From Pristiophorus japonicus (Eukaryota), in contig NC_091979.1 of assembly GCF_044704955.1 (NCBI RefSeq), positions 319,300,001 through 319,364,000 of the forward strand: a DNA stretch of 64,000 nt, in the 5' to 3' direction. The position numbers and the translations under genes are program-made. Under the pieces are notes generated by a model that searched no databases, was not told the origin of the DNA, and saw only the letters and a list, made by a program, of their open reading frames with translations. Shown here piece after piece: positions 3,626-64,000 of the stretch (within the stretch, counting starts at the first letter, position 1; each line of letters opens with the position of its first letter).

Positions 3626-4191
3626 CCTCTCTAATCTGGATCCTCTGGGGAACAACAGATACTCTCTAATGTGGCAAAAAACCCAGAATGACAATATTAT
3701 TCGGCAAAAAACTGTAATAATGTTAATTGTGATAAATAAAATTACGGAGAAGCACCTGGATAAATCAGCAGATGGATAATGGTAATACATTGCTCAATTT
3801 CTTATTGGTTCTTTTAAAGCTGCTTTCTGCTGATAAACTAACAATAGTCCTTTGATAACCTTTCTGATGGAATGGGGGAAACTGAGCTACACATCCAGAA
3901 AAAGCTGGTCAAAATTATTTCCAGGTTCAAGCAACTTTGGGCGATAGAACTGATCATCAAAATCAGAACAGGAACGGAACGGTGTTCTATACTCTGTCAC
4001 TCAGCAATGACCCCTAGTGCTGATAATCCTCAGGAAATACTGAAGCTGACACAATGTGCACCAGCCCCAGCATACTCGTGTGTTATCTCTCGATCTAATC
4101 CAGGGCTGTCCGCGGAACACATTAATCCCACCCACATTGCGCCTTTCTTCTGATTGCTGAGTTTGAAGCAGTGTCCGGGAGGATTGCGACT

Positions 4192-7100: not shown

Positions 7101-7920
7101 CTCGCTCTGTGCCCTCAGCAAACCCCCTCCCTCGCTCTGTGCCCTCACCAAACCCCCTCCCTCACTCTGTGCCCTCACCAAACTCCCTCCCTCGCTCTGT
7201 GCCCTCAGCAAACCCCCTCCCTCACTCTGTGCCCTCACCAAACTCCCTCCCTCGCTCTGTGCCCTCAGCAAACCCCCTCCCTCGCTCCGTGCTCTCACCA
7301 AACCCCTCCCTCACTCCGTGCCCTCATCAAACTCCGTCCCTCACTCCGTGCCCTCATCAAAACCCCTCCCTCGCTCTGTGCCCTCACCAAACCCCCATCT
7401 CGCTCGGTGCTCTCACCAAACCCCCTCCCTCGCTCCGTGCCCTCACCAAACCCCCTCCCTCACTCTGTGCCCTCACCAAACCCCCTCCCTCACTCCGTGC
7501 CCTCACAAAACCCCCTCCCTCGCACCGTGCCCTCACCAAACCCCCTCCCTCGCTCGGTGCTCTCACCAAACCCCCTCCCTCACTCCGTGCCCTCACCAAA
7601 CCCCCTCCCTCACTCTGTGCCCTCACCAAACCCCCTCCCTCGCTCTGTGCCCTCACAAAACCCCCTCCCTCGCACCGTGCCCTCACCAAACCCCCTCCCT
7701 CGCTCTGTGCCCTCACCAAACCCTCTCCCCCGCTCCGTGCCCTCACCAAACCCCCTCCCTCGTTCTGTGCCCTCACCAAACCCCCTCCCTCGCTCCATGC
7801 CCTGACCAAACCCCCCTCCCCCGCTCCATGCCCTAACCAACGCCCCCCCCGCCCCCTGCTCTGTACCCTCACCAAACCTCACCCCCCTACCCCAGCTGTG
7901 GGCCCTCACCAAACCTCCCC
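4192..7920. repeat. ~3.7-kb 30-bp minisatellite (~120 units)
   Basis: Unit gccctcaccaaaccccctccctcgctctgt in exact 30-bp phase for ~3.1 kb, degenerating at the right end. Confidence 0.98.
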
Positions 7921-8393: not shown

Positions 8394-9129
8394 CATCACC
8401 TATGGAAACTATGCCTGGGTATATTATCACATGGGCCAACTGACAGAGGCCCAGTCCTACCTCGACAAGCTGGAGATGATCTGTAAACAATTTACTGATG
8501 GCTCTCGGTATACAGCACTGATACCTGAAGTATACGGGGAGAAGGGTTGGTCACTGTTGAGTTCTGCCGCTCAATGCTATGAAGAGGCAAAGGAATGTTT
8601 TGAGAAGGCTCTGGAGGAAGATTCTGATGACACTGAATGGAACGTTGGCTATGCGACTGCTCTGTTTTGTCTGGAAGGGTTTTCTGGTACCCCAGAGAGT
8701 GGTGACCGCAGCCAATCAGTGAAGCGGTTACAACGTGTGCTGGAACTTGATCCAGATGACTCTGTAACCATGGTGATGTTGGCTCTAAAACTGCAAGAGT
8801 TCAATCAAAAGGAGGCAGCACTCAGGAGTTCAATCAAAAGGAGGAAGTTGACCAAGCATTGCAGAAGTCTCCTGATCTTCCATATGTAACTCGTTATGCA
8901 GCAACATTTCTGAGAAGAGAAGATGTGGAAAAAGCTGTGGAGCTGTTGAAGAATGCATTAGAAATTACCCCAAACTCTCCCTTCTTACACCACCAAATAG
9001 GTCTGTGTTACAGAAAGCGACTACTTCAACTGATCAAATATCCAGGCAGCAGAGACCCTCGCAATCCTGCTTTTCAACAGAAAGCTGAGTTGATCAATCA
9101 ATGCAAGTACTATTTTCAAATGGCATTTA
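8394..9129 (+). pseudogene. IFIT: IFIT-family (interferon-induced TPR protein) pseudogene fragment, copy 1
   Basis: Translation ITYGNYAWVYYHMGQLTEAQSYLDKLE...EKGWSLL...YEEAKECFEKALEEDSDD...PYVTRYAA...LHHQIGLCYRK; N-terminus missing; internal duplication and frameshift at ~8797-8845; cut by a CR1 tail at 9130. Confidence 0.88.
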
Positions 9130-16715: not shown

Positions 16716-19700
16716 AGAAACATAGAAACATAGAAAATAGGTGCAGGAGTCGGCCATTCGGCCCTTCGAGCCTGCACCACCATTCAATAAGATCATGGCT
16801 GATCATTCCTTCAGTACCCCGTTCCTGCTTTCTCTCCATACCCCTTGATCCCTTTAGCCACAAGGGCCATATCTAGCTCCCTCTTTGAATATATCCAATG
16901 AACTGGCAACAACAACTCTCTGCGGTAGGGAATTCCACAGGTTCACAACTCTATGAGTGAAGAAGTTCCTCCTCATCTCAGTCCTAAATGGCTTACCCCT
17001 TATCCTTAAATTGTGTCCCCTGGTTCTGGACTTCCCCAACATCGGGCCTGCATCTAACCTGTCCAGTCCCGTCAGAATTTTATACGTTTCTATGAGATCC
17101 CCTCTCATCCTTCTAAACTCCAGTGAATACAGGCCCAGTCGATCCAGTCTCTCCTCATATGTCAGTCCTGCCATCCCGGGAATCAGTCTGGTGAACCTTC
17201 GCTGCACTCCCGCAATAGCAAGAACGTCCTTCCTCAGATTAGGAGACCAAAACTGAACACAATATTCCAGGTGGGGCTTCACCAAGGCCCTGTACAACTG
17301 CAGTAAGACTTCCCTGCTCCTATACTCCTACACCTGAAGTACTGCGTGCAGTTTTGGTCACCTTACTTAAGGAAGGATATATTGGCTTTGGAGGGGGTAC
17401 AGAGATGATTCACTAGGCTGATTCTGGAGATGAGGGGGTTACCTTATAGAAAACATAGAAAACATAGAAAATAGGTGCAGGAGTAGGCCATTCGGCCCTT
17501 CGAGCCTGCACCACCATTCAACAAGATCATGGCTGATCACCCACCCCTGCACCTCCATATTATGATGATAGATTAAGTAGACTGGGTCTTTACTCCTTGG
17601 AGTTCAGAAGGATGAGGGGTGATCTTATAGAAACATTTAAAGTAATGAAAGGGATAGACAAGATAGAGGCAGAGAGGTTGTTTCCACTGGTCGGGGAGAC
17701 TAGAACTAGGGGGCACAGCCTCAAAATACGGGGGAGCCAATTTAAAACTGAGTTGAGAAGGAATTTCTTCTCCCAGAGGGTTGTGAATCTGTGGAATTCT
17801 CTGCCCAAGGAAGCAGTTGAGGCTAGCTCATTGAATGTATTCAAATCACAGAGAGATAGATTTTTAACCAATAAGGGAATTAAGGGTTACGGGGAGCGGG
17901 CGGGTAAGTGGAGCTGAGTCCACGGCCAGATCAGCCATGATCTTGTTGAATGGCGGAGCAGGCTCGAGGGGCTAGATGGCCTACTCCTGTTCCTAATTCT
18001 TATGTTCTTATGTTCTTATGTTCCTCACAGCTCACACCGCCACCCAGTTTAGTGTCATCTGCAAACTTGGAGATATTACATTCAATTCCATCATCTAAAT
18101 CATTAATATATGTTGTAAAATAGCTGGGGTCCCAGCACTGAGCCCTGCGGCACTCCACTAGTCACTGCCTGCCATTCTGAAAAGGACCTGTTAATCCCGA
18201 CTCTCTGCCTCCTGTCTGCCAACCAGTTCTCTATCCACATCAGTACATTACCCCCAATGCCATGTGCTTTGATTTTGCACACCGATCTCTTGTGTGGGAC
18301 CTTGTCAAAAGTCTTTTGAAAGTCCAAATACACCACATCCACTGATTCTCCCCTGTCCACTCTACTGGTTACATCCTCAAAAAATTCCAGAAGATTTGTC
18401 AAGCATGATTTTCCTTTCATAAATCCATGCTGAATTGGACCAATCCAAATGCGCTGCTATTTCATCCTTAATGATTGATTCCAACATTTTCCCCACTACT
18501 GATGTCAGGCTAACCGGTCTATAATTACCCGTTTTCTCTCTCCCTCCTTTTTTAAAAAGTGGTGTTACATTAGCAACCCTCCAGTCCATAGGAACTGATC
18601 CAGCGTCAATAGACTGTTGGAAAATTATCACCAATGCATCCACTATTTCTAGGGCCATTTCATTAAGTACTCTGGGATGCAGACTATCAAGCCCTGGGGA
18701 TTTATCGGCCTTCAATCCCGTCAATTTCCCGAATACAATTTCCCGCCTAATTACAATATCCTTCAGTTCCTCCTTCTCACTAGACCTTTGGTCCCCTAGT
18801 ACATCCGGAATGTTATTTGTGTCTTCCTTTACAAAGACAGAACCAAAGTACTTGTTCAATTGGTCTGCCATTTCTTTGTTCCCCATTATAAATTCACCTG
18901 AATCCGACTGCAAGGGACCTACGTTTGCCTTCACTAATCTTTTTCTCTTAACATATCTATAGAAGCTTTTGCAGTCAGTTTTTATGTTTCCGGCAAGCTT
19001 CCTCTCGTACTCTATTTTCCCCCTCTTAATTAAACCTTTTGTCCTCCTCTGCTGTATTCTAAATTTCTCCCAGTCCTCTGGCTTGCTACTTTTTCTGGCT
19101 AATTTGTATGCCTCTTCATTGGATTTAACACTATCCTTAATTTCCCTTGTTAACCACGGTTGAGCCACCTTCCCTGTTTTATTTTTACTCCAGACAGGGA
19201 TATACAATTGTTAAAGTTCATCCATATGATCTTTGTGTTTTGCCATTGCCTATCCACCGTCAACCCTTTAAATATCATTTGCCAGTCTAATCTAGCCAAT
19301 TCGCGCCTCATGCCATCAAAGTTACCTTTCCTTCTGTTCAGGGCCCGAGTTTCTAAATTAACTTTCTCACTCTCCATCTTAATAAAGAATTCTACCATAT
19401 TATGGTCACTCTTCCCCAAGGAACCTCGCACAACAAGATTGCTAATTAGTCCCTTCTCATTACACATCATCCAGTCTAGGATAGCCAGCTCTCTGGTTGG
19501 TTCCTCGACATATTGGTCTCGAAAACCATCCCCAATACACTCCAGGAAATCCTCCTCCACTGCATTGCTACCAGTTAGGTTAGCCCAATCAATATGTAGA
19601 TTGAAGTCGCCCATGGTAACTGCTGTACCTTTATTGCACACATCCCTTATTTCTTGTTTGATGCTGTCCCCAACCTCACTGCTATTATTTGGTGGCCTGT

Positions 19701-29537: not shown

Positions 29538-31175
29538 TGGTTGGAAATAGCCAAGTTTAAGGCTATCTCTGGTCCCTTTAATAATCAGGATCAACGGTAA
29601 AACCAATCTGGTGGATACATTATATTTAATCAGAGTTTAAGACAGAATATAACATATTAGTTATAGAGCAAAAACATACAACCGTAACAGGTAGTTGATA
29701 CCGATTCCGATCGGACAAAAGGCTGATACAAGTGAGCAGTACTCTGGCTTGCAGTCTCTTTCTCTCGTCTAGATCTTCCTTCGGTAAAGCATGGGATCTT
29801 TCTCGAAAAGTGTTCAATCAGCTAAATTTCTGTTTCGCCCTTCCCTCACACCATCTATACCATCATTCTTCAGGAAGCTACTTTTATTCTATTTTTAGGA
29901 GTGGGCCTGACCCTGGATATTGACAAGACCGTTTGACCTTTCGAGGTGCCCCTAAAAACTTACTATCCAATAAGCTTTCTAGTTCTTTGTCTCAATTCTT
30001 GTTTCAACAACCCGCCTTAAAGATGTCTTACAATTTTGGTCACATTTCACTATTTATATCTTATCGAAGTAGCTTTTCTGTGGAATTCCTTTGATACCTC
30101 TCTGTCTCTATTCTCCCAGGAACAATCACTACACAGCCTTATTCCTCTACTCTTTGAACTATGAAGCTGATGTGGAGTATTACAAAGATGCTCAACACAA
30201 GTCTGTTTTGGAGAAAAGATTTGTTTATTAAGTACTCGATCGAGAGAAAGACAGCTTCTGCACGAGTTCAGTAACTCAGTGATCCAAACTAGCTGTTCTC
30301 CTCGAACAAGCGTCAGGTTACTATTTTTATAGTAACAGTCAAAATACATACAAAATTATGAAGTTCCGTGTGGAAGCTTTCCATTTGTTGTTTCCCTGCC
30401 GCATCACAAAGTTTCGCCTAACTTTATGATTGCAAATATTAATTAGTTAATACAATTATATTGACAGCAAGCTTCGTTACCTCCCCTGTGCGCCTTTTAT
30501 CTGATAAGTTACGTGCTACATCATTCTCAGGTCTGCGCCTCTTGGCTGATCTGCTCTCAACCAGTTGAGATTTTTCTCAATCCGCCTTTGTTTCCCGTAA
30601 TCATTTATCACCTCATGTGACCTAACCTTGGCCCAACTGTCTGGGTTATACTGTGATAAGGTGATTTATCTTCCGAAGAGTTGGAGTTTTAACATTTTCC
30701 CTGTGTTTCGGAGCACGTATTTCTTTTGTTTCTGACAGCCTTTGTTTTTGGTTGTTAACGTTACTTAATTAGGTCCCCTTTGATTAATTAGGTTCCCTCT
30801 ACTTCATTTTTTTTCTACAGAAGCAAAACCAGAAAACTGCTCACCCCAGAGTGTTACCTCTTTTACGACATAGCAACATGTTTACCGTAACTCTACAAAC
30901 TTCCTTTCATTATCTACGCCAGCAGTTTTGTTCAGGTAACTTTAAACCCTACCCGTTGCATTATACATAAAATACATCAACAAGTATTTAAATTGCCTAG
31001 CATCAGGGAGATTGTAAATAGTACAAAAAACTATACCCTCCATTTCTAAGCATTTCTCTGATTCGAATAGATATTCCGTCTGCAGTTCAAAACAACGATT
31101 TAAACATAATATTCTTATCCGTTTTACACATTCGTGACAGTTTTATGCATTTTTAGGAATCCCTGATTTCGAAAA
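29538..31175 (-). repeat. Putative 5' LTR of the ERV (~1.64 kb)
   Basis: 31065-31175 and 29626-29700 both match the 3' LTR remnant; followed by TGGCTTCGGGGGCAGGAC, a degenerate tRNA-Ser-like PBS at 29518-29535. Confidence 0.65.
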
Positions 31176-32003
31176 AGTGCTGACAATCAGATGCCCCTCA
31201 CAACCAACAGTAATACAATAACTCATTGATAGTCTATATGTTACAAGCAGTAATAGGTGTAATGTCTCTCTATCCTACGTGTAACTAGCAGTAATACTTT
31301 AACCCACTGATACTCACCCTGAAACCATACCCAGAATCCCCCTGCACTGCACCAGGTGAGGTCAGGCTCCCCAGTTGAAGCCACATTTAACAGGCCCCAT
31401 CTCTCTCTCTATCTCCTTGGAATCTGATTTGGTCTCCGGTTCCGTGTGAAGGTGACAATTCTGAACTGGGAACCTCAGTCTGAGCTGATCTGTATTTGGA
31501 CTTCACACGTCAAACCCGGCCGGCACAGACCCACCTGAACCAATCCGAGAGATTGCGCAAAGGGCAGTGAGCTCAGTGTTTGGGGCACTTCTCACAGGGA
31601 ACATTGTCCTAAACTCAGCTCAGCACCAACATTTCTAAACCATTCCATGTGTTCGGTCTCAATAAAGGAGGGTTTTCATAGAATTATAGAAATGACTACA
31701 CAGGAGGAGACCATTCGGCCTCGGAGCTCGCACTCTCTTCTGTAATCCCATTCCCCCCAGATCTTATAACATTCTTCCTTTTCAAATATTTATCACGTTC
31801 CCTTTAGGTTTTAGAATCCTTGGTTTCTGTTCCATAGTTCCCCATTCGCCCACCACTGGAAATAATCTTTCACTATTTACCCACAGTAAGGTCCCCAGGT
31901 TTCACTCACCCCTTTACTGGCTGCTCCTCTCTCAGTGTCACTCCCACTCACCACGTTGCTGCTGCTCCCGGCTCTGGGGGAAATACTGGAACCCACACCC
32001 ACT

Positions 32004-32783
32004 CCATTCCCCAGTCTCCCTCTCCCCGAGCCCCCATTCCCCAGTCTCTCTCTCCCCGAGCCCCCATTCCCCAGTCTCTCTCTCCCCGAGCCCCCATTCC
32101 CAAGTCTCCCAGTCCCCAAGCCCCCATTCCCCAGTCTCCCTCTCCCAGAGCCCCCATTCCCCAGTCTCCCTCTCTCCCCGAGCCCCCATTCCCCAGTCTC
32201 TCTCTCCACGAGGCCCCATTCCCAAGTCTCCCTCTCCCCAAGCCCTCATTCCCCAGTCTCCCGCTCCCCGAGCCCCCATTCCCCAGTCTCTCTCTCCCCG
32301 AGGCCCCATTCCCAAGTCTCCCTCTCCCCAAGCCCTCATTCCCCAGTCTCTCTCTCCCCGAGCCCCCATTCCCAAGTCTCCCAGTCCCCAAGCCCCCATT
32401 CCCCAGTCTCCCGCTCCCTGAGCCCCCATTCCCCAGTCACCGTCTCCCTGAACCCCCATTCCCCAGTCTCCCTCTCCCCAAGCTCCCATTCCTCAGTCTC
32501 CCACTCTCCCCAAGCCCCCATTCCCCAGTCTCCCTCGCCCGGAGCCCCCATTCCCAGTCTCCCTCTTCCCAAGCCCCCATTCCCCAGTCTCTCCCTCTCT
32601 CCCCGAGCCCCCATTCCCCAGTCTCCCTCTCCCCCACCCCCCATTCCCCAGTCTCCCTCTCCACGAGCCCCCATTCCCCAGTCTCCCTCTCCCTGAGCCC
32701 CCATTCCCCAGTCTCTCTCTCCCCAAGCCCCCATTCCCAGTCTCCCTCTCTCCCCCAGCCCCCATTCCCAGTCTCCCTCTCCT
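32004..32783. repeat. ~30-bp purine/pyrimidine-skewed minisatellite, array A
   Basis: Unit ccccattccccagtctccctctccccgagc. Confidence 0.95.
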
Positions 32784-33107
32784 CCGGCCACCATACATAG
32801 AATCATAGAATGGTTGCAGCACGGAAGACGACCATTTGGCCATCCAGCCCGTGCCGAATTAGACATATCTCATTTACATTAAACACCAAAAGACCCAACT
32901 GGAGATTTCTATCCAATCACCAAAAAGAAAATATCCCCAAACCCACTCAATGATAGATACGTTACCGATTACTATTAACACTGGCAGCAGCCAGTGACAA
33001 TCAAACGAAATGAAGATGCAGAATCGTGGATTGCTTCTGAATGAACCCTCCTTGCGACACAGCAAGTCCAGATTCTAGTCCCAGTGAACTTCACTTCGGG
33101 ATCAGCC

Positions 33108-34175
33108 TCAGGCTTGGGCTGGTGAGTTTGGGGATAATTCTCTTCGTTCAGCAGGGTTCGCTGGGCTGTAACCAGATGTCTCCTCTCCTCCTCTCCTCTT
33201 CCACACAACCGCACCGATCACAAGAACAATCAGGGCGACGGCAGCAATCACAATTCCAACAATCAAACCCCTATTTGTTCCCTCTGGCGATCCTGGAGTC
33301 ACTCGGAACGTCCCGTCCCAGTCTCGGGTCTTCCCTCCTTCTTGGCCGCTCTGCTCATACTGACAGGAATAGGTGGCTCCATCCGCGGGCTCGATCTGAG
33401 CCCATGTCGTGAGCTGGTAGGTGCCATCGTGGTTGGGCAGGATGCCCGTGGATTCCGTGTCCCTGATTGGCTCGCCATTTCTCAGGAGGGTCACTTGGAT
33501 TTCGCGAGGGTAAAAACCTGTGAGGAGACAGGAGAGTTGGGGGGCTTTAATATTTGACGCCTTGTCCACAGAAGGAAACACTTGAGGAGCAACAGCTCCC
33601 AGTTCTCTCTCTCCAGCCTTCAGGTATTTCTTCAGCCACTCGATGCACTCCTGCTCCAGGTAACTTTTGTCCTGCTGCATTTCGGCCCTGTCCTGGTCCC
33701 ACTTGTTCTTGGTGATCTCTCCCCACGGTACCGGGGTGACCCACACCAGGCGATCCTTGTCGAAGCTGATCAGGTCCTTCCCGTCCCAGCCGTACTGCCA
33801 GAAGCCGCTGGTGGTGCCGTCATCCCGCAGCTCACAGCCGCACAACCTCTGCAGCGTGTGGATCCCGCCGGTCTGGTTGGTGCGGGTTAAGACGGTCTGA
33901 ATGTTGCCTTTCATCACCTGCTCCTTGCCCCGCAGGATCTGTGTGTAGCGCTCCCAGTACTCGGCGCCCTCGCTCTCCCTGATCCACCGCTGCCGCGGGG
34001 TGTACTGCCGGCTCACACTGTCATAGTAAATAAACTGCTGGTCATCCACATAACCCACATCGGTGAACTCAGCAATGCCCGGGAGCGGAGTGATAGCCGT
34101 GTGCATGTACCGTAGGGAGTGAGAGCCTGCACACACCTCTCCACACAGAAGGGCCAGCACGGTCAGTCCAAACAT
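33108..34175 (-). CDS. MHC class I heavy chain, single-exon, UAA (classical)-like, 355 aa
   Basis: Leader MFGLTVLALLCGEVCA; alpha1 GSHSLRY..GYVDD..YWERYTQ..RTNQT; alpha2 GCE..YGWDGKD..TKNKW..YLEQECIEWLKKY; alpha3 SCLLTGFYP..PNHDGTYQ..YSC; TM GLIVGIVIAAVALIVLVIGAVVW; tail with GYSPA; no stops; aacaATG context. Confidence 0.95.
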   Translation of the reverse strand: MFGLTVLALLCGEVCAGSHSLRYMHTAITPLPGIAEFTDVGYVDDQQFIYYDSVSRQYTPRQRWIRESEGAEYWERYTQILRGKEQVMKGNIQTVLTRTNQTGGIHTLQRLCGCELRDDGTTSGFWQYGWDGKDLISFDKDRLVWVTPVPWGEITKNKWDQDRAEMQQDKSYLEQECIEWLKKYLKAGERELGAVAPQVFPSVDKASNIKAPQLSCLLTGFYPREIQVTLLRNGEPIRDTESTGILPNHDGTYQLTTWAQIEPADGATYSCQYEQSGQEGGKTRDWDGTFRVTPGSPEGTNRGLIVGIVIAAVALIVLVIGAVVWKRRGGEETSGYSPANPAERRELSPNSPAQA

Positions 34176-34272
34176 TGTTACTTCCCTCGACAGGCTGGGA
34201 TGAGCAGTTTGCAGGCAATCCTTTTCCGAGAGACCGTCCGTGAGCTGCGCCCAATTCAGACCGTGTGATTCC

Positions 34273-35126
34273 TGTGCCCAGTGCCGATACTGTGTCTCTG
34301 GGACTGTCTCTCTGTGCCCAGTGCCGATACTGTGTCTCTGGGACTGTCTCTCTGTGCCCTGTGCTGATACTGTGTCTCCGGGACTGTCTCTCTGTGCCCT
34401 GTGCTGATACTGTGTCTCTGGGACGGTCTCTGTGCCCTGTGCTGATACTCTGTCTCTGGGACTGTTTCTCTGTGCCCTGTGCTGATACTGTGTCTCTGGG
34501 ACTGTCTCTGTGCCCTGTGCTGATACTGTGTCTCACTGTGTCTCTGGGACTGTCTCTGTGCCCTGTGCTGATACTGTGTCTCTGGGACTGTCTCTGTGCC
34601 CTGTGCTGATACTGTGTCTCTGGGACTGTCTCTCTGTGCCCTGTGCTGATACTGTGTCTCTGGGACTGTCTCTCTGTGCCCTGTGCTGATACTGTGTCTC
34701 TGGGACTGTCTCTCTGTGCCCTGTGCTGATATTGTGTCTCTGGGACTGTCTCTGTGCCCTGTGCTGATACAGTGTCTCTGGGACTGTTTCTCTGTGCCCT
34801 GTGCTGATACTGTGTCTCTGGGACTGTCTCTCTGTGCCCTGTGCTGATACTGTGTCTCTGGGACTGTCTCTGTGCCCTGTGCTGATACTGTGTCTCACTG
34901 TGTCTCTGGGACTGTCTCTCTGTGCCCTGTGCTGATACTGTGTCTCTGGGACTGTCTCTGTGCCCTGTGCTGATACTGTGTCTCTGAGACTGTCTCTGTG
35001 CCCTGTGCTGATACTGTGTCTCTGGGACTGTCTCTCTGTGCCCTGTGCTGATACTGTGTCTCTGAGACTGTCTCTGTGCCCTGTGCTGATACTGTGTCTC
35101 TGGGACTGTCTCTGTGCCCTGTGCTG
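34273..35126. repeat. 38/40-bp minisatellite (~22 units) between the MHC I promoter and ATG
   Basis: Unit tgtgccctgtgctgatactgtgtctctgggactgtctc(tc). Confidence 0.95.
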
Positions 35127-35154
35127 TCTGTTCTTGCGCTTTGCCCAGTGCAGA

Positions 35155-35240
35155 GTGTTTTACACTCAGACTCCTCCGGACTGATTGGTTCGAGGGTATA
35201 TTTGTCTCCAATTACAATAAAAACAGGCTGTGAGTCAATA
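35155..35240 (-). promoter_or_regulatory. Proximal promoter elements (AP-1 TGACTCA, CCAAT, weak TATA-like tgtaaaa)
   Basis: tgagtca ~35232-35238; ctgattgg 35181-35188; ttttaca ~35157-35163 on the plus strand. Confidence 0.4.
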
Positions 35241-35311
35241 GGCTCCGAGTAGAAAAGACACGGGGAGAGTTTGTGTTGGTGCCGAAATAAACTTTCCAAA
35301 CATTGAACTAT

Positions 35312-35353
35312 CCAATCAGACAAATACTGCGAGCTGCATCATCAGTTGCCGGG
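35312..35353 (-). promoter_or_regulatory. MHC X1-X2-Y promoter module
   Basis: Minus strand CCCGGCAACTGATG (X1-like), TGATGCA (X2-like), 20-bp spacer, CTGATTGG (Y), facing the class I ORF. Confidence 0.72.
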
Positions 35354-35479
35354 TAGGTTAAAGATAATCTCCGCATCTCCCGGTCCCGAGTTCTCCCACC
35401 ACCCTCCAAACCCAACTTCCCGACTCCCAACCCCCCGAAAGCTCTGCCCACCCCCGGCAGCTCGATCTCCTGAGGGGTT

Positions 35480-35700
35480 CAAGGGATCTGCTGGGAGGGG
35501 GCTGAAGGGATCTGCTGGGAGGGGCTGAAGGGATCTGCAGGGAGGGGACTGAAGGGATCTGCTGGGAGGGGCTGAAGGGATCGGCTGGGAGGGGCTGAAG
35601 GGATCTGCAGGGAGGGGACTGACGGGATCTGCTGGGAGGGGGCTGAAGGGATCTGCAGGGAAGGGACTGAAAGGATCTGCTGGGAGGGGGCTGAAGGGAG
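35480..35700. repeat. ~24-bp tandem repeat
   Basis: Unit gaagggatctgc(t/a)gggagggg(g/a)ct, ~9 copies. Confidence 0.9.
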
Positions 35701-35856
35701 TTGCTGTGGTGTGTGAGAGAAGGCCAGGGCTGGAGAGGCCCAGTGACCTTGTCTGGAGCCCAGGGATCAGTCCAGCTCCTCCAGGCCCCCACAGAATAAA
35801 TTACACTCAACCTGGCCTCTTCTACCTCCCGCCTGGCCTCACCATGATCCTCCCTG

Positions 35857-36375
35857 ACCCATTCCCCAGTCTCTCTCTCTCCCCGAGCCCCCATTCCCCC
35901 TCTCCCCGAGCCCCCATTCCCCAGTCTCCATCTCCCCGAGGCCCCATTCCCCAGTCTTCCTCTCCCCGAGCCCCCATTCCCCAATCTCTTTCTCCCCGAG
36001 CCCCCATTCCCCAGTCTCCCTCTCCCCGAGCTCCCATTCCCCAGTCTCGCTCTCCCTGAGCCCCCATTCCCCAGTTTCCCTCTCCCCAAGCCTCCATTCC
36101 CCAGTCTCCCTCTCCCCGAGCCCCCATTCCCCAGTTTCCCTCTCCCCAAGCCCCCATTCCCCAGTCTCCCTCTCCCCAAGCCCCCATTCCCCAGTCTCCC
36201 TCTCCCCGAGCTCCCATTCCCCAGTCTCCCTCTCCCCAAGCCTCCATTCCCCATTCTCACTCTCCCCAAGTCCCCATTCCCCAGTCTCCCTCTCCCCGAG
36301 GCCCCATTCCCCAGTCTCCCTCTCCCCGAGCCCCCATTCCCCAGTCTCCCATTCCCCGAGCCCTCTTTCCCCAGT
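35857..36375. repeat. ~30-bp minisatellite, array B (same family and orientation as array A)
   Basis: Unit cccccattccccagtctccctctccccgag. Confidence 0.95.
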
Positions 36376-36740
36376 GTTAAGGGATGATCTATTTGAGATG
36401 TTTGATATGATTAAAGGATTTGATCGGGTAGATCGAGAGAAACGATTTCCTCTGGTGGGGGAGGCCAGAACAAGGGGGCATGAAATAGAAATTTGAGCTC
36501 AGCCATTCAGGGGTGATGTCAGACAGCACTTCTTCACACAAAGGGTACTGGAAATCTGGAACTATCTCCCCCAATAAGCTGTCGAGGTTAGGCCAAATAA
36601 AAATGTCAAAACTGAGATGATAGAATTTTGTTAGGCAAGGGTATTAAGGGTTACAGAACCAGGGTGGGTAGATGGAGTTGTGATACAGTTCAACCATGAT
36701 AAATTAAATGGTGGAACATGTTCCTATGTTCCTACCTATG
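36376..36740 (+). mobile_element. Old CR1 3' fragment
   Basis: agggatgatctatttgag...ttcttcacacaaagggt...ttcctatgttcct tail. Confidence 0.75.
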
Positions 36741-38049
36741 ATCAGACTAATGGATGATCGTGGATTTCTGCTGGCACTCATGAGCCAATTGTTCATTTGT
36801 TGTTGCCTCCGGGACCATTACGGGATTCCAATGGGTTTCCCCCGAACTGAGGAATGCCAGGCAGTGAGGCTGCAGAGAGGTGTTCCGGACCCATGTGCAC
36901 TGACCTGCTCATCTGTTCTGCTATTCTGACTTTACCAGCATTGCTATGTTGATTATATATGAGCTAAAAATGTAAGTTAGATACACATAAGATGGGCTTT
37001 GATTATTTTGTTCTCTTACAGCAACACACTGAATGATTGCTTGAAAGCAAAACTCGGCCAGCTTCAATGTCACTTCACGTGGGGCCCACAGAGAGACAGC
37101 ATTGACTTGGGCGACATGAAGTATAGATTACAAGATTTAATACAGGCTGGTGTGAATTATCAGGCCAGGTCTGACAACCACCTCGCATTTGTAAACTGTC
37201 AGCAAGGCAATTCAAAGGGGCAATTCAAAACTTAAAGGAAGCTGAAAAGATTCTGAGGGAGAACCATGAACATGAATTTGAAAGAAGAAGCATCATCACC
37301 TATGGAAACTATGCCTGGGTATATTATCACATGGACCAACTGACAGAGGCCCAGTTCTACCTCGACAAGCTGGAGATGATCTGTAAACAATTTGCTGATG
37401 GCTCTCGGTATACAGCACTGATACCTGAAGTATACAGGGAGAAGGGTTGGTCACTGTTGAATTCTCCTCGTCAATACTATGAAGAGGCAAAGGAATGTTT
37501 TGAGAAGACTCTGGAGGAAGATCCTGATGACACTGAATGGAACGTTGGCTATGCGACTGCTCTGTTCCGTCTGGAAGGGTTTTCTGGTACCCCAGAGAGT
37601 GGTGACCGCAGCCAATCAGTGAAGCAGTTGCGACGTGTGCTGGAACTTGATCCAGATGACTCTGTAGCCATGGTGATGTTGGCTCTAAAACTACAAGAGT
37701 TCAATCAAAAGGTGGACGAACACGAATTAGTTGAACAAGCATTGCAGAAGTCCCCTGATCTTCCATATGTAACTCGTTATGCAGCAAAATTTTACAGAAG
37801 AGAAGATGTGGAAAAAGCTGTGGAGCTGTTGAAGAAAGCATTAAAAATTACTCCAAACTCTACCTTCATACACCACCAAATAGGTCAGTGTTACAGAAAA
37901 AAAATATATCAACTGATCAAATATCCAGGCAGCAAAGCCCCTCGCAATCCTGCTTTTCAACAGAAAGCTGAGTTGATCAATTAATGCAAGTACTATTTTG
38001 AAAAGGCATTTGAGCAGAAGCCATCATTTATTTTTGCACAATTGCAAAT

Positions 38050-40680
38050 CTACAACGCAGAAGGAGGCCATTTCGGCCCATCGTGTCCACACCGGCCGAC
38101 AAAGAAACATACGGCCCTCAGTCAGCAGCCCTGAAAGTTACATATAAACGTATGAACAATGAACAATGGCAGAAAGGTAAAGAACACCCAGCCCAACCAG
38201 TCTGCCCCACACAACTGTGACACCCCTTGCACCAAAACATTCTACACTCCTCCCCAACCGGAGCCATGTGATCCCCTGGGAAAGGCAAAAACCAGATAAA
38301 AACCCAGGTCAATTGGGGAAAAAAGATCTCGGAACATTCCTCTCCAACCCATCCAGGTAATCGAAACTTGGCCAGGAGATCACCCTGGATATATTCGATT
38401 CCCTGCAGTACTTACCATCATAGCTGTGCCTGCCAACAACAGGTTATCCAGTCTAATCCCACTTACCAGCTTTAGGTCCGTGTAACCCTGCAGATTGTGG
38501 CACTTTAATTGTCCATCCAAACACCTTTTAAATGTGTTGAGGGTTTCTACATCCACCACCCTTCCAGGCCCTAAGTTCCAGACTCCCACAACCCTCTGCT
38601 TGAAAAAGCCACCCCTCAAATCCCCTCTGAACCTTCCACCAACCACCTTAAAACTATGCCCCCTCATAATTGAACCCACCACCAAGGGAAATAGGCCCTT
38701 GCTATCCACTATATCCAGACCCCTCAAAATTTTGTACACCTCAATGAGGTCTCCTCTCAACCTCCTCTGTTCCAATGAGAACAAACCCAGCCTATCCAAT
38801 GATGTGGTATATTTGGACTTTCAGAAGGCTTTCGACAAGGTCCCACACAAGAGATTAATGTGCAAAGTTAAAGCACATGGGATTGGGGGTAGTGTGCTGA
38901 CGTGGATTGAGAACTGGTTGTCAGACAGGAAGCAAAGAGTAGGAGTAAATGGGTACTTTTCAGAATGGCAGGCAGTGACTAGTGGGTTACCGCAAGGTTC
39001 TGTGCTGGGGCCCCAGCTGTTTACATTGTACATTAATGATTTAGATGAGGGGATTAAATGTAGTATCTCCAAATTTGCGGATGACACTAAGTTGGGTGGC
39101 AGTATGAGCTGCGAGGAGGATGCTATGAGGCTGCAGAGTGACTTGGATAGGTTAGGTGAGTGGGCAAATGAATGGCAGATGAAGTATAATGTGGATAAAT
39201 GTGAGGTTATACACTTTGGTGGTAAAAACAGAGAGACAGACTATTATCTGAATGGTGACAGATTAGGAAAAGGGAAGGTGCAACGAGACCTGGGTGTCAT
39301 GGTACATCAGTCATTGAAGGTTGGCATGCAGGTACAGCAGGCGGTTAAGAAAGCAAATGGCATGTTGGCCTTCATAGCGAGGGGATTTGAGTACAGGGGC
39401 AGGGAGGTGTTGCTACAGTTGTACAGGGCCTTGGTGAGGCCACACCTGTAGTATTGTGTACAGTTTTGGTCTCCTAACTTGAGGAAGGACATTCTTGCTA
39501 TTGAGGGAGTGCAGCGAAGATTCACCAGACTGATTCCCGGGATGGTGGGACTGACCTATCAAGAAAGACTGGATCAACTGGGCTTGTATTCACTGGAGTT
39601 CAGAAGAATGAGAGGGGACCTCATTGAAACATTTAAAATTCTGACGGGTTTAGACAGGTTAGATGCAGGAAGAATGTTCCCAATGTTGGGGAAGTCCAGA
39701 ACCAGGGGTCACAGTCTAAGGATAAGGGGTAAGCCATTTAGGACCGAGATGAGGAGAAACTTCTTCACCCAGAGAGTGGTGAACCTGTGGAATTCTCTAC
39801 CACAGAAAGTAGTTGAGGCCAATTCACTAAATATATTCAAAAGGGAGTTAGATGAAGTCCTTACTACTCGGGGGATCAAGGGGTATGGCGAGAAAGCAGG
39901 AAGGGGGTACTGAAGTTTCATGTTCAGCCATGAACTGATTGAATGACGGTGCAGGTGAGAAGGGCTGAATGGCCTGCTCCTGCACCTATTTTCTATGTTT
40001 CTATGTTTCTATCCTCATAGCTAAGTTTCTCCATTCCAGGCAGCATCCTAGCAAATGTCCTCTGCACCCTCTCTATTGCAATCACGTCCTTTCTATAATA
40101 CGGCGACCAGAACTGCACGCAGTACTCCAGCTGTGGCCCAACCAAAGTATTATACATTTTAAGCATAACCTCCCTGCTCTTGTATTATGTGCCTCAGCCA
40201 AGAAAGGCAACCATTCCGTATGCCTTCTTCACCACCTTATCCACCTGGCCTGCTACTTTCAGGGATCTGTGGACAAGCACTCCAAGATCCCTTTATTCAT
40301 CTACACTTTTACGTGGTCTACCGGTTAATGTGTATACCCTTTCCTTATTAGCCCTCTCAAAGTGCATTAACTCACACTTTTCCAAATTAAATTCCATTTG
40401 CCACTGTTCTGCCCACCTGACCATTAGATTGATATCCTCCTGCAGTCCATGACTTTCTGCTTCATTAACGACCACACAGCCAATTTTGGTGTCACTTGCA
40501 AACTTCTTAATCATACTCCCGATAATCAAATCTAGATCATTGATGTATACCACAAAAAGCAAGGGACCCAGTACTGAGCCCTGCGGACCCCACTGGAAAC
40601 ATCCTTCCAGTCACAAAAACATCCATTAACCATTACCCTTTGCTTCTTACCGCTGAACCAATTTTGGATCCAACTAGCAT
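38050..40680 (-). mobile_element. CR1 LINE (long 3' UTR family) interrupted by another CR1
   Basis: ORF 38380..38799 LGLFSLEQRRLRGDLIEVYK continues at 40012..40680 (KFASDTK). Confidence 0.88.
38800..40011 (+). mobile_element. CR1 RT/3' fragment
   Basis: DVVYLDFQKAFDKVPH...; tttctatg tail. Confidence 0.95.
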
Positions 40681-55519: not shown

Positions 55520-56870
55520 ATCCTATTTGGAAGAAACATCGGGCCTAAGTTTCCACACACGCCTAGAACGGCGCAGTCCCGACCTGGACGCCCGTTTTTC
55601 GCGCCACAAAGTGCGCCTAAAAAAATCCTCGGTATTCTCCACCTCCCTGCAGGTCCTCTGGCCCTCGCGCAGCGCAGCACGAGCTGTGGTGGGCGGAGCC
55701 ATGTCCCTGCGCTGAAAACAGTGCCGGGACCTCTGCACATGCGCGCTATAGTGGGCACGCAAGTGCAGTAGCTCCAGGCGCCCGAAGCACGCAGCCCCTA
55801 GCCCTGGCCGAATGGCCTCACTGGAGCTGCGTGAATAAGGCTCCTCCCCCGGCCAGCTCCTGCTTCCCCCACCCCCCGACCGGACCCGACCCGATCCGAC
55901 CCGCGCTCCTGCTCCCCCCCACCCCCGAATGGACCCGACCCGACCCGACTCCCGCCCCCCAACCTGACCCCCCCGACCCTCCGACTGGACCCCCCCCGAC
56001 TCGATTCCCACCCCCCCCCCAACCCGACCGGACTCCCGCTTCCGCTCCCGCTCCGCCCCCCGCCGACTGGACCTGACCCGCGCTCCTGCTCCCGCTCCCC
56101 GCCCCCCCACCCCGACTCGACCCGACCCGATCTGACACGACTCGACTCCCGCTCCCCCCCCCGCCCCCAGACTGGATCCGACCTGACCTCCCCCTCCCCG
56201 ACCTGACCTCTNNNNNNNNNNNNNNNNNNNNNNNNNNNNNNNNNNNNNNNNNNNNNNNNNNNNNNNNNNNNNNNNNNNNNNNNNNNNNNNNNNNNNNNNN
56301 NNNNNNNNNNNNNNNNNNNNNNNNNNNNNNNNNNNNNNNNNNNNNNNNNNNNNNNNNNNNNNNNNNNNNNNNNNNNNNNNNNNNNNNNNNNNNNNNNNNN
56401 NNNNNNNNNNNNNNNNNNNNNNNNNTCTCTCTCACCCTCCCCCCTCTCTCTCCCCCCCTCCCCACTCTCTCTCTCTCCCTGCCCCCCTCTCTCTCCCTCC
56501 CTCCCTACCCCCCCCCTCTCTCTCCCTCCCTCCCCCCCCCCGCTCTCTCTCCCTCCCTCCCTCCCCCCGACCCGAACCGAACCGAACCTCCCCGACCCAA
56601 CGCCACCTACCTGTAAATCTGGTGCTGGGGACGGGCCCTGCCTGAAGTCTCGGGCCGGCCCGTTCAGCCTTCGGTCCCGAAAGGCCTGCCTGAAGCACTT
56701 TCACACAGGTTGGGAGATGGTTTATTTAATCTTTTCTTTGCTTATAAATGTTTATTCAGGTTGGATTTATTTGTATAATATTTGTATAAGTATAAATAAG
56801 GATTTATTATAGAATTTAATGACTTCCCTTCCCTGTCCCTCCCCCCCCCACCTCGTTCTGGACGCCTAAT
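55520..56870. mobile_element. GC-rich non-autonomous DNA-transposon-like repeat containing low-complexity ccga/ccct tracts
   Basis: gggcctaagtttccac terminus resembling the Harbinger ends elsewhere in the window; family assignment tentative. Confidence 0.45.
56212..56425. other. Assembly gap (N run)
   Basis: 214 N. Confidence 1.
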
Positions 56871-61790: not shown

Positions 61791-64000
61791 CATAACATAA
61801 GAATTAGGAACAGGAGTAAGCCATCTAGTCCCTCGAGCCTGCTCCGCCATTCAACAAGATCATGGCTGATCTGGCCGTGGACTCAGCTCCACTTACCCGC
61901 CCGCTCCCCGTAACCCTTAATTCCCTTATTGGTTAAAAATCTATCTATCTGTGATTTGAATACATTCAATGAGCTAGCCTCAACTGCTTCCTTGGGCAGA
62001 GAATTCCACAGATTCACAACCCTCTGGGAGAAGAAATTCCTTCTCAACTCGGTTTTAAATTGGCTCCCCCGTATTTTGAGGCTGTGCCCCCTAGTTCTAG
62101 TCTCCCCGACCAGTGGAACCAACCTCTCTGCCTCGATCTTGTCTATCCTTTCATTATTTTAAATGTTTCTAAAAGATCACCCCTCATCCTTCTGAACTCC
62201 AATGAGTAAAGACCCAGTCTACTCAATCTATCATCATAAGGTAACCCCCTCATCTCTGGAATCAGCCTAGTGAATCGTCTCTGTACCCCGTTCAAAGCTA
62301 GTATATCCTTCCTTATAACGACCAAAACTGCACGCAGTATTCCAGGTGCGGCCTCACCAATACCCTGTACAGTTGCAGCAGGACCTCCCTGCTTTTGTAA
62401 TCCACCCCTCTCGCAATGAAGGCCAACATTCCATTCGCCTTCCTGATTACCTGCTGCACCTGCAAACTAACTTTTTGTGATTCATGCACAAGGACCCCCA
62501 GGTCCCTCTGCACCACAGCATGTTGTAATTTTTCCCCATTCAAATAATATTCCCTTTTACTGTTTTTTTTTCCAAGGTGGATGACCTCACATTTTCCGAC
62601 ATTGTATTCCATCTGCCAAACCTTAGCCCATTCGCTTAGCCTATCTAAATCTCTTTGCAGCCTCTCTGTGTCCTCTACACAACCCGCTTTCCCACTAATC
62701 TTTGTGTCATCTGCAAATTTTGTTACACTACACTCTATCCCCTCTTCCAGGTCATCTATGTATATTGTAAACAGTTGTGGTTCCAGCACCAATCCCTGTG
62801 GCACACCACTAACCACCGATTTCCAACCCGAAAAGGACCCATTTACCCCGACTCTCTGCTTTCTGTTCGCCAGTCAATTCTCGATCCATGCTAATACATT
62901 TCCTCTGACTCCGCGTACCTTTATCTTCTGCAGTAACCTTTTATGTGGCACCTTATCGAATGCCTTTTGGAAATCTAAATATACCACATCCATCGGTGTA
63001 CCTCTATCCACCATGCTCGATATATGCTCAAAGAATTCCAGTAAATTAATTAAACATGATTTCCCCTTCATGAATCCATGTTGCGTCTGCTTGATTGCAC
63101 TATTCCTATCTAGATGTCCTGCTATTTCTTCCTCAATGATAGTTTCAAGCATTTTCCCCACTACAGATGTTAAACTAACCGGCCTATAGTTACCTGCCTT
63201 TCATCTGCCCCCTTTTTTAAACAGAGGTGTTACATTAGCTGCTTTCCAATCCGCTGGTACCTCCCCAGAGTCCAGAGAATTTTGGTCGATTATAACGAAT
63301 GCATCTGCTATAACTTCCGCCATCTCTTTTAATACCCTGGGATGCATTTCATCAGGACCAGGGGACTTGTCTACCTTGAGTCCCATTAGCCTGTCCAGCA
63401 CTACCCCTCTAGTGATAGTGATTGTCTCAAGCTCCTCCCTTCCCACATTCCTGTGACCAGCAATTTTTGGCATGGTTTTTGTGTCTTCCACTGTGAAGAC
63501 CGAAACAAAATAATTGTTTAAGGTCTCATCCATTTCCACATTTCCCATTATTAAATCCCCCTTCTCATCTTCTAAGGGACCAACATTTACTTTAGTCACT
63601 CTTTTCCATTTTATATATCTGTAAAAGCTTTTACTATCTGTTTTTATGTTTTGCGCAAGTTTACTTTCGTAATCTATCTTTCCTTTCTTTATTGCTTTCT
63701 TAGTCATTCTTTGCTGTCGTTTAAAATTTTCCTAATCTTCTAATTTCCCACTAACCTTGGCCACCTTATACGCATTGGTTTTTAATTTGATACTCTCCTT
63801 TATTTCCTTGGTTATCCATGGCTGGTTATCCCTTCTCTTACCGCCCTTCTTTTTCACTGGAATATATTTTTGTTGAGCACTATGAAAGAGCTCCTTAAAA
63901 GTCCTCCACTGTTCCTCAATTGTGCCACCGTTTAGTCTGTGTTTCCAGTCTACTTTAGCCAACTCTGCCCTCATCCCACTGTAGTCCCCTTTGTTTAAGC
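61790..64000 (-). mobile_element. CR1 LINE ORF2 (runs off the window)
   Basis: Multiple minus ORFs with RT motifs; aacataag tail. Confidence 0.95.

What the first reader, a model, noticed from the sequence alone, without database searches (positions are those of the whole stretch)
35312..35353. The intronless class I gene keeps a correctly spaced MHC X1-X2-Y promoter
Seen: on the gene's strand, CCCGGCAACTGATG then exactly 20 bp then CTGATTGG, with TGATGCA overlapping the X end. It lies ~1.14 kb from the ATG, or ~280 bp if the intervening minisatellite is removed. Known: the RFX/CREB/NF-Y module with 19-20 bp X-Y spacing recruits CIITA or NLRC5, and ordinary retrocopies do not carry sequence upstream of the TSS. 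Inference: introns were removed by cDNA-mediated recombination at a native or duplicated locus, or the retrocopy came from an upstream-initiated transcript or captured an MHC promoter. An S box at canonical distance was not evident.
Basis: partly seen in the sequence, partly recalled or inferred. Interest (0 to 1): 0.8.

Follow-up and report, generated by a model that had tools for sequence, protein, structure and literature searches.

The report
MHC X-Y promoter module inside retrocopy
A Japanese sawshark's intron-free MHC class I gene really does carry a textbook MHC "X1-X2-Y" control module upstream. The module seems to have travelled with the gene when it was copied through RNA, but public gene models start further upstream and splice over it, so whether it is the working promoter today is open.

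Summary
Observation confirmed. On the gene's (minus) strand, CCCGGCAACTGATG (35353-35340) is followed by 20 nt and then CTGATTGG (35319-35312). TGATGCA (35341-35335) shares the canonical 2-nt overlap with X1. A textbook X1-N20-Y pattern finds only this site in 64 kb (2 mismatches; 0 of 100 shuffles match).

The module lies in a ~3.07-kb unit (~32786-35857) inserted into one 30-bp satellite. The unit ends in a CR1-type hairpin and octamer tail.

"Keeps a promoter" is only partly supported:
- There is no S box at the canonical ~16 nt, and no ISRE or kB site.
- X2 is degenerate.
- The public protein model identical to this ORF (P0124) has an N-terminal exon at 36818-36748 spliced to 34194. Sister copies use ATGCTG at 36941-36936 spliced to 34244. 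These models place the module in an intron.
- A contig of a probable RNA run spans the module and its upstream flank.

In favour of use:
- A second CCAATCAG lies 62 nt before the minisatellite.
- There is no ATG from 35302 to the start codon.
- CpG is retained.

The scan had already noted the same module at other copies of this family (s1-874748, s1-878174).

The parts
35340..35353 (-). X1 (RFX-type) box, CCCGGCAACTGATG
   Evidence: Read directly. It has 2 mismatches to the textbook X1 within the composite pattern, which has a unique hit. It holds the only RGYAAC half-site in 35100-35480.
35335..35341 (-). X2-like (CRE/ATF-like) box, TGATGCA, overlapping X1 by TG
   Evidence: It is one CpG-to-TpG step away from TGACGCA (inference).
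35312..35319 (-). Y box (inverted CCAAT, NF-Y type), CTGATTGG, 20 nt after X1
35380..35386 (-). S-like GGACCGG, 26 nt upstream of X1 (not canonical and not significant)
   Evidence: The canonical S-X distance is about 16 bp (PMC4374748). In the probable RNA contig, three differences from the window fall on the canonical S position (35370, 35373, 35375).
35181..35188 (-). Second NF-Y-type box, CCAATCAG (forward on the gene strand), 123 nt after Y and 62 nt before the minisatellite; candidate core-promoter CCAAT
34272..35126 (.). 40-bp minisatellite (21.4 copies) between the module and the 5' leader; contains no ATG on the gene strand
34176..34271 (-). Unique 5' leader holding two annotated-model splice acceptors (exon starts at 34244 and 34194)
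33108..34175 (-). Intact single-exon MHC class I ORF, 355 aa
   Evidence: Pfam MHC_I plus C1-set; PDB 6lup, E 6e-94; 100% identical to P0124 over its 355 residues.
32786..33107 (-). 3' UTR ending in a hairpin and ATTCTATGATTCTATG (CR1-type tail) that abuts the satellite
   Evidence: the octamer pair recurs at 5 other sites in the window (two lie beside LINE reverse-transcriptase ORFs); hairpin -25.7 kcal/mol, z = -3.2.
32786..35857 (-). Whole inserted unit (~3.07 kb): 5' flank, 24-bp minisatellite, module region, 40-bp minisatellite, leader, CDS, 3' UTR, CR1 tail
   Evidence: The same 30-bp satellite in the same orientation lies on both sides (32004-32794 and 35858-36375).
36748..36818 (-). 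Upstream 5' exon of the public model of this gene (encodes MVPEATTNEQLAHECQQKSTIIH plus TA); donor GT at 36747-36746
   Evidence: tblastn of the P0124 N-terminus, 100% identity; sequence.
36936..36963 (-). Candidate small upstream exon ending ATGCTG|GTAAAG, matching the 'ML' N-terminus of sister-copy models P0001 and P0121
   Evidence: The exon's 5' limit (acceptor AG at 36965-36964) is inferred.

Best explanation
The X1-X2-Y string is a genuine MHC enhanceosome module (RFX site, CRE-like site and NF-Y site in canonical overlap and 20-nt spacing). It was inherited from a parental class I promoter. It sits inside a ~3.07-kb unit that was inserted in one step into a 30-bp satellite by CR1-type target-primed reverse transcription. 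The template RNA was spliced in the coding part, ended in a CR1 tail, and began upstream of the normal promoter. After insertion, a 40-bp minisatellite expanded at about the old transcription start, pushing the module from ~280 to ~1,140 nt from the ATG. Today the gene has at least one further source of transcripts: 5' exons recruited from the flank (36818-36748 and 36963-36936), which splice over the module. The module most likely still acts as an internal proximal promoter or enhancer, working with the CCAATCAG at 35188-35181. It would bind RFX, CREB/ATF and NF-Y, but without a canonical S box, so NLRC5 dependence is doubtful. Shown: the motif, its uniqueness, the unit's boundaries, the CR1 tail, and the mapping of the model N-termini. 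Inferred: parental origin, the upstream-initiated template, and present activity.
For: - Motif and spacing: (unique hit, 2 mismatches, 0 of 100 shuffles).
- An X-Y distance of 20-22 bp, and SXY lying upstream of the TSS, are the published rule (PMC4374748).
- The unit is bounded on both sides by the same satellite.
- The tail is a CR1-type hairpin plus octamer pair that recurs at 5 other sites in the window, two of them beside LINE RT ORFs.
- The geometry without the minisatellite is coherent: Y, 123 nt, CCAATCAG, ~62 nt, array edge, then a 96-nt leader.
- There is no ATG on the gene strand from 35302 to 34176 (P about 0.02 for the 272 unique nt).
- CpG o/e is 0.71 in 35127-35471 against 0.45 for the whole window and 0.34 in the upstream-exon region.
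- Contigs of a probable RNA run lie on the proximal minisatellite units (34286-34355), which are intronic under the spliced models.
- A 97%-identical contig shows differences on both sides of the module but none within it.
- About 3% of expressed mammalian retrocopies inherit a promoter in just this way, and new 5' exons are common in retrogenes (PMC4772013).
Against: - The public models of this gene and of two sister copies start at least 1.4 kb upstream and splice over the module.
- No S box lies at ~16 nt, and no ISRE or kB site is present.
- X2 is degenerate.
- A contig of the probable RNA run covers 35167-35434, which takes in the module and 80 nt upstream of it. This fits transcription through the module. 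The run's kind is not on record, and contigs show neither strand nor ends.
- The lack of ATG is not strand-specific: the plus strand has only 1 ATG in the same 272 nt.
- Homology with a parental promoter was not tested.
- The copies are 98-100% identical, so the intact motif may simply be young.
Confidence: 0.5

Rival explanations
1. Working, self-sufficient class I promoter. The module is the gene's main promoter, recruits NLRC5 or CIITA, and gives transcripts that start just downstream and carry the minisatellite in a long 5' UTR. The upstream-exon models would be minor or artefactual isoforms.
For: - Canonical X1/X2 overlap and X-Y spacing.
- A downstream CCAATCAG.
- A 1.13-kb leader free of upstream ATGs.
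- Upstream-exon transcripts would put in-frame ATGs (36818, in a strong context; 36941) 25-30 codons ahead of the signal peptide, which is a poor design for a secreted-pathway protein.
- Three of the six public models are plain 355-aa proteins.
- A contig lies on 34286-34355.
Against: - The S box, essential for NLRC5 (PMC4374748), is missing at the canonical distance.
- No ISRE or enhancer A is present.
- The model identical to this ORF splices over the module.
- A contig spans the module and its upstream flank.
Confidence: 0.25
2. Inert passenger. The module was carried in with the retroposed RNA and has no present role. The family is transcribed only from recruited upstream exons, and the motif looks intact because the unit or its duplicates are young in a slowly mutating genome.
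For: - Upstream-exon models exist in three of six copies.
- The module lies 1.14 kb from the ATG, behind a minisatellite.
- S, ISRE and kB sites are missing, and X2 carries a TpG where a CRE has CpG.
- The CR1 hairpin and tail are also still perfect, which argues for little decay anywhere in the unit.
- The copies are 98-100% identical.
Against: - The family's stem branch is long (0.24, against 0.18 for its sister P0005). If retroposition was early, an unconstrained 29-nt composite would be expected to have decayed.
- The leader is free of ATG and CpG is retained.
- The upstream-exon mRNAs encode N-terminally extended proteins.
Confidence: 0.2
3. Not parental. The module was captured from elsewhere, for example from a dispersed solitary SXY copy or a second insertion, or the introns were lost by cDNA recombination at a native locus and the gene then moved as DNA.
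For: An earlier scan note (s1-879241, unchecked) reports exon-less SXY copies among transposons in this genome. The 5'-most 150 nt of the unit differ in CpG content from the module region (o/e 0.07 against 0.71).
Against: One clean insertion into one satellite, with a CR1 tail exactly at the 3' junction, is most simply a single reverse-transcription event. No other copy of 35127-35460 exists in the window.
Confidence: 0.05

Closest known systems
Mammalian MHC class I SXY module bound by the RFX/CREB/NF-Y enhanceosome and NLRC5 (Ludigs et al. 2015, PMC4374748)
   Same: X box followed by a Y box at 20-22 bp; orientation towards the gene; located upstream of a class I coding sequence.
   Different: No S box at ~16 bp, although S is the element that confers NLRC5 specificity. 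No ISRE or enhancer A alongside. It lies 1.14 kb from the ATG. Annotated transcripts start upstream of it, whereas at NLRC5 targets the module lies upstream of the TSS.
MHC class II X-Y promoter and distal X-Y enhancers (CIITA type; Krawczyk et al. 2004, as cited in PMC4374748)
   Same: The X1 string is within 2 mismatches of the textbook class II-type X1. It shows the 2-nt X1/X2 overlap, 20 nt to CTGATTGG, and could act at a distance.
   Different: It stands in front of a class I gene. The S box is not in place, and occupancy is unknown.
Retrocopies that inherit a parental promoter from an upstream-initiated transcript (Carelli et al. 2016, PMC4772013, Fig. 2A; about 3% of expressed retrocopies)
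   Same: An intronless coding copy carrying parental-type promoter sequence 5' of its leader, which also gained new 5' exons from the flank.
   Different: It was mobilised by a CR1-type tail, not by L1 and poly(A). It is an MHC gene whose promoter module is a recognisable enhanceosome site. Homology to the parental promoter and the TSS have not been shown here.
Class I genes moved out of the MHC with conserved promoter elements (opossum UB/UC, flanked by retroelements; PMC1351924)
   Same: A classical-type class I gene outside the MHC that keeps SXY-type elements and is associated with retroelements.
   Different: Those genes keep their introns. This one is a single coding exon in an IFIT cluster.

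Membership tests
MHC SXY enhanceosome module | X1 (RFX) box | tested here: met
   CCCGGCAACTGATG at 35353-35340, 12 of 14 matches to the textbook X1; unique composite hit.
MHC SXY enhanceosome module | X2 (CRE/ATF-like) box overlapping the 3' end of X1 | tested here: inconclusive
   TGATGCA at 35341-35335 has the right position and 2-nt overlap, but no TGACG core.
MHC SXY enhanceosome module | Y box (inverted CCAAT) 20-22 bp from X | tested here: met
   CTGATTGG lies 20 nt after X1; rule taken from PMC4374748.
MHC SXY enhanceosome module | S box ~16 bp upstream of X | tested here: not met
   ATGCGGA sits at the canonical position. The only S-like string is 26 nt away and could be chance. The canonical position varies between copies.
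MHC SXY enhanceosome module | Lies upstream of the gene's TSS | tested here: inconclusive
   The public models imply a start at least 1.4 kb upstream of the module. A proximal TSS is not excluded. There are no CAGE data or raw reads.
MHC SXY enhanceosome module | Occupied by RFX, CREB and NF-Y and dependent on NLRC5 or CIITA | not testable with these tools
   Needs ChIP or a reporter assay.
Promoter-inheriting retrocopy | Intronless coding region derived from a spliced parent | tested here: met
   A single 1,068-nt ORF covers leader to cytoplasmic tail. No joints were seen in contigs over 32850-33936.
Promoter-inheriting retrocopy | Hallmark of reverse transcription at the 3' end | tested here: met
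   A CR1-type hairpin plus ATTCTATGATTCTATG lies at the junction with the satellite.
Promoter-inheriting retrocopy | The inserted unit extends 5' of the parental TSS | tested here: inconclusive
   The unit's 5' edge at ~35857 is ~500 nt beyond the module. The parental TSS is unknown.
Promoter-inheriting retrocopy | Upstream part is homologous to the parental promoter | not tested
Retrogene with recruited 5' exons | New upstream exons outside the retroposed unit spliced into the leader | tested here: met
   The P0124 N-terminus maps to 36818-36750 and then 34193 onward, with GT and AG at the breaks. The 'ML' of P0001 matches ATGCTG|GT at 36941-36934. This rests on public protein models, not on reads.

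The most novel reading that the evidence does not exclude
A self-contained, portable antigen-presentation cassette. A CR1-mobilised class I retrogene took its own RFX/NF-Y enhanceosome promoter with it, landed in an IFIT cluster, and was amplified there to six or more intact copies. These copies would still be driven by MHC-type regulation outside the MHC. If so, MHC promoter logic can be moved by retroposition, and the module is older than the shark/bony-vertebrate split in class I as well as class II.
Probability: 0.3. Interest if true: 0.75.

Novelty: new variant of a known kind. Interest (0 to 1): 0.55.

Why it matters
Retrocopies normally arrive without a promoter, so one that brings a recognisable MHC enhanceosome module shows how an immune gene can be relocated together with its regulation. 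It also gives a shark example of the X1-X2-Y architecture with mammalian spacing. If the module is used, class I expression outside the MHC, next to interferon-induced genes, would remain under RFX/NF-Y control. If it is bypassed, the locus shows a retrogene switching from an inherited promoter to recruited 5' exons. Either outcome can be tested with 5'-end mapping in one species.

Tried and rejected
- **Chance match:** rejected.
- **Second module or another copy of the promoter region in the window:** none. Self-BLAST of 35127-35460 gave no real hit, and there is no X1-like box before the second CCAAT.
- **ISRE, kB, CRE or palindromic RFX sites near the module:** none. The only ISRE-like core nearby (36482) lies in a repeat that recurs in the window.
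- **Module as an IFIT promoter or a shared bidirectional promoter:** not supported. The module lies inside the inserted unit. IFIT exon 2 starts near 37018 on the plus strand and carries a frameshift. No IFIT first exon or ISRE was found between 36376 and 37018 or in 31100-32004.
- **TATATAA at 36959-36953 as a TATA box for the upstream exon:** rejected, because it lies inside the candidate exon.
- **Expression and TSS from reads:** only one run was offered, kept as contigs and of unrecorded kind. It showed no joints and had holes at 33994-34081 and 34170-34257, so it cannot place a start.
- **Dating the retroposition from the protein tree:** the tree gives only the split from P0005, not the insertion time.

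Full report
**1. What is there**

The minus strand of 33108-34175 carries an intact 355-aa MHC class I ORF with no intron. It has Pfam MHC_I (E 8e-53) and C1-set domains. Its best solved relative is PDB entry 6lup, "MHC class I protein" (E 6e-94), which attributes to Ginglymostoma cirratum (nurse shark).

The word search finds six near-identical UniRef proteins of Pristiophorus japonicus, 98-100% identical to this ORF. In a maximum-likelihood tree the family is sister, with weak support (86/80), to another sawshark class I protein, P0005 (73% identity). Squalus acanthias class I is the next relative. The family's stem branch is 0.24 changes per site.

**2. The observation**

On the gene strand:
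- CCCGGCAACTGATG occupies 35353-35340.
- Twenty bases follow.
- CTGATTGG occupies 35319-35312.
- TGATGCA (35341-35335) begins with the last two bases of X1, which is the canonical X1/X2 overlap.

The end of Y is 1,137 nt from the ATG. The 40-bp minisatellite at 34272-35126 (21.4 copies) makes up 855 nt of that.

A generic pattern built from the textbook X1, 20 N and CTGATTGG, allowing up to 3 mismatches, hits only this place on both strands of the 64-kb window. The hit has 2 mismatches, and none of 100 dinucleotide shuffles gives any hit. The published rule for occupied modules is S-X about 16 bp and X-Y 20-22 bp, with the module upstream of the TSS (PMC4374748). The X1-X2-Y part is therefore real and not chance.

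**3. What is missing**

- At the canonical S position (35376-35370) the sequence is ATGCGGA.
- The only S-like string, GGACCGG (35386-35380), lies 26 nt from X1 and has too few specified bases to mean anything.
- There is no ISRE core, kB site or CRE within the unique region 35127-35471.
- X2 lacks the TGACG core. It is one CpG-to-TpG step from TGACGCA (inference).

According to PMC4374748 the S box is the element that confers NLRC5 specificity, so recruitment of NLRC5 cannot be assumed.

**4. Surroundings and origin**

The same 30-bp satellite, in the same orientation, lies at 32004-32794 and at 35858-36375. Everything between, about 32786-35857 (3.07 kb), is foreign to it. In gene orientation the unit contains:
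- about 150 nt of unique sequence;
- a 24-bp minisatellite (35472-35706);
- the unique 345 nt that hold the module;
- the 40-bp minisatellite;
- a 96-nt leader;
- the ORF;
- a 3' UTR.

The 3' UTR ends in a stable hairpin (-25.7 kcal/mol, z = -3.2) followed by ATTCTATGATTCTATG directly at the satellite junction. The same octamer pair, within 2 mismatches, occurs at five other places in the window, where 0.04 matches are expected by chance. Two of these, at 12932 and 39990, lie beside LINE reverse-transcriptase ORFs.

The simplest reading is one target-primed reverse-transcription event of CR1 type. Its template was a class I RNA spliced in its coding part but starting upstream of its own promoter module. 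It corresponds to the "inherited promoter" class, about 3% of expressed mammalian retrocopies (PMC4772013).

Earlier notes of this scan, made on other copies, reached the same view of the tail and the satellite insertion (s1-874724, s1-878157, s1-878475). I checked both points on this window independently.

The ends of the 40-bp array resemble the unique sequence beside it, so it probably expanded in place (inference).

**5. Is the module the promoter now? Evidence against**

P0124 is 100% identical to this ORF and carries 30 extra N-terminal residues.
- Residues 1-23 map at 100% identity to 36818-36750, and residues 25-47 map to 34193-34125.
- The split codon TA|C, a GT at 36747-36746 and an AG at 34196-34195 fit an intron of 2,553 nt.
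- That intron contains the module.

Two sister copies (P0001, P0121) begin ML-LTDGLSEK. In this window that corresponds to ATGCTG|GTAAAG at 36941-36934, joined to the acceptor before 34244. Both upstream exons lie outside the inserted unit, antisense to the start of IFIT exon 2, and both have plausible acceptors of their own. The true start may therefore be further away (inference).

I compared the model exon by exon and did not join the pieces.

These are public protein models, and I could not see the reads behind them.

The only sequencing run offered (X1) is kept as contigs and its kind is not on record. Its size (136 Mb of contigs) and the summed depths of tens of thousands over class I coding sequence make RNA-seq likely (inference).
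- Near-identical contigs lie on 32850-33936 without joints.
- One contig lies on 34286-34355.
- One 97%-identical contig lies on 35167-35434. This covers the module plus 80 nt upstream of it, which fits transcription through the module.

Contigs cannot show ends or strand.

**6. Is the module the promoter now? Evidence for**

- A second NF-Y-type box, CCAATCAG (35188-35181), lies 123 nt after Y and 62 nt before the array. Without the array the layout would be module, CCAAT, a start near the array's edge, and a leader of roughly 100-140 nt. That is a normal class I promoter geometry (inference).
- From 35302 to the start codon there is no ATG on the gene strand. For the 272 unique nt, shuffles expect 3.0 ATGs and give none in 2.3% of trials. 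The opposite strand is also ATG-poor, so this is weak evidence.
- CpG o/e is 0.71 in the module region and 0.63-0.82 across the leader, ORF and 3' UTR. It is 0.45 for the window and 0.34 around the upstream exons.
- The upstream-exon transcripts place in-frame ATGs 25-30 codons ahead of the signal peptide, which is an awkward design. Three of the six public models are the plain 355-aa protein.
- The contig on 34286-34355 covers sequence that is intronic under both spliced models.
- In the 97% contig the listed differences fall at 35248, 35250, 35370, 35373 and 35375, with none in 35312-35353. At 3% divergence that has a chance probability of about 0.28, so it carries no weight.

**7. Verdict**

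The module is a genuine MHC X1-X2-Y site (about 0.85) and most probably came in with the retroposed unit (about 0.7). Whether it is used today is open.

The same module was already noted by first-stage readers at other copies of this family (s1-874748, s1-878174). A spliced class I gene of this genome is reported to have tandem SXY modules (s1-879240, unchecked). If that is true, a transcript started at the distal module would offer a simple source for an RNA that carries the proximal one.

**8. Comparison and novelty**

The site works like, and is partly a member of, the SXY family: X1, Y and their spacing are met, X2 is doubtful, and S is not met. As a gene it belongs with promoter-inheriting retrocopies and with retrogenes that gain 5' exons, both of which are known kinds (PMC4772013). 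Three things are new here: CR1 mobilisation, an MHC class I gene as cargo, and a recognisable enhanceosome module as the inherited promoter, in a shark. I found no paper describing this.

Noticed in passing
window 37018-37984 (+): An IFIT-like gene lies head-to-head with the class I unit. Its large exon starts after an acceptor near 37018 and changes frame around 37200-37215 (GNSKG|AIQNLKEAEK). The ORF then stops at 37984, ahead of a LINE RT ORF (38495-39451). It is probably a pseudogene.
   Followed up: partly
window 8431-8889 (+): A second IFIT fragment that lacks its N-terminal part and is broken by frameshifts. It abuts a ~3.8-kb satellite (4100-7900).
   Followed up: partly
window 36748-36963 (-): Two small exons, used by public class I models, lie antisense to the 5' end of the IFIT gene. 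Each has an in-frame ATG and plausible acceptors of its own, so the real transcript start may lie further right, inside or beyond the IFIT gene.
   Followed up: partly
window 34272-35126: The 40-bp minisatellite has no ATG on the gene strand in 855 nt, although 47 of its trinucleotides are one change away from ATG.
   Followed up: partly
window 9131, 12932, 16721, 39990, 31677: TTTCTATGTTTCTATG-type octamer pairs recur. Those at 12932 and 39990 lie beside LINE reverse-transcriptase ORFs. They have the same tail type as the class I unit.
   Followed up: partly
window 36446-36680: A dispersed repeat (about 65% identical copies at 1796-2030, 17681-17916 and 61884-62184) lies between the satellite and the upstream exons. 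It contains the only ISRE-like core near the gene (GAAATAGAAA at 36482, plus strand).
   Followed up: no
window ~55900-56400: A run of N (an assembly gap or masked stretch) lies inside a GC-rich repeat.
   Followed up: no
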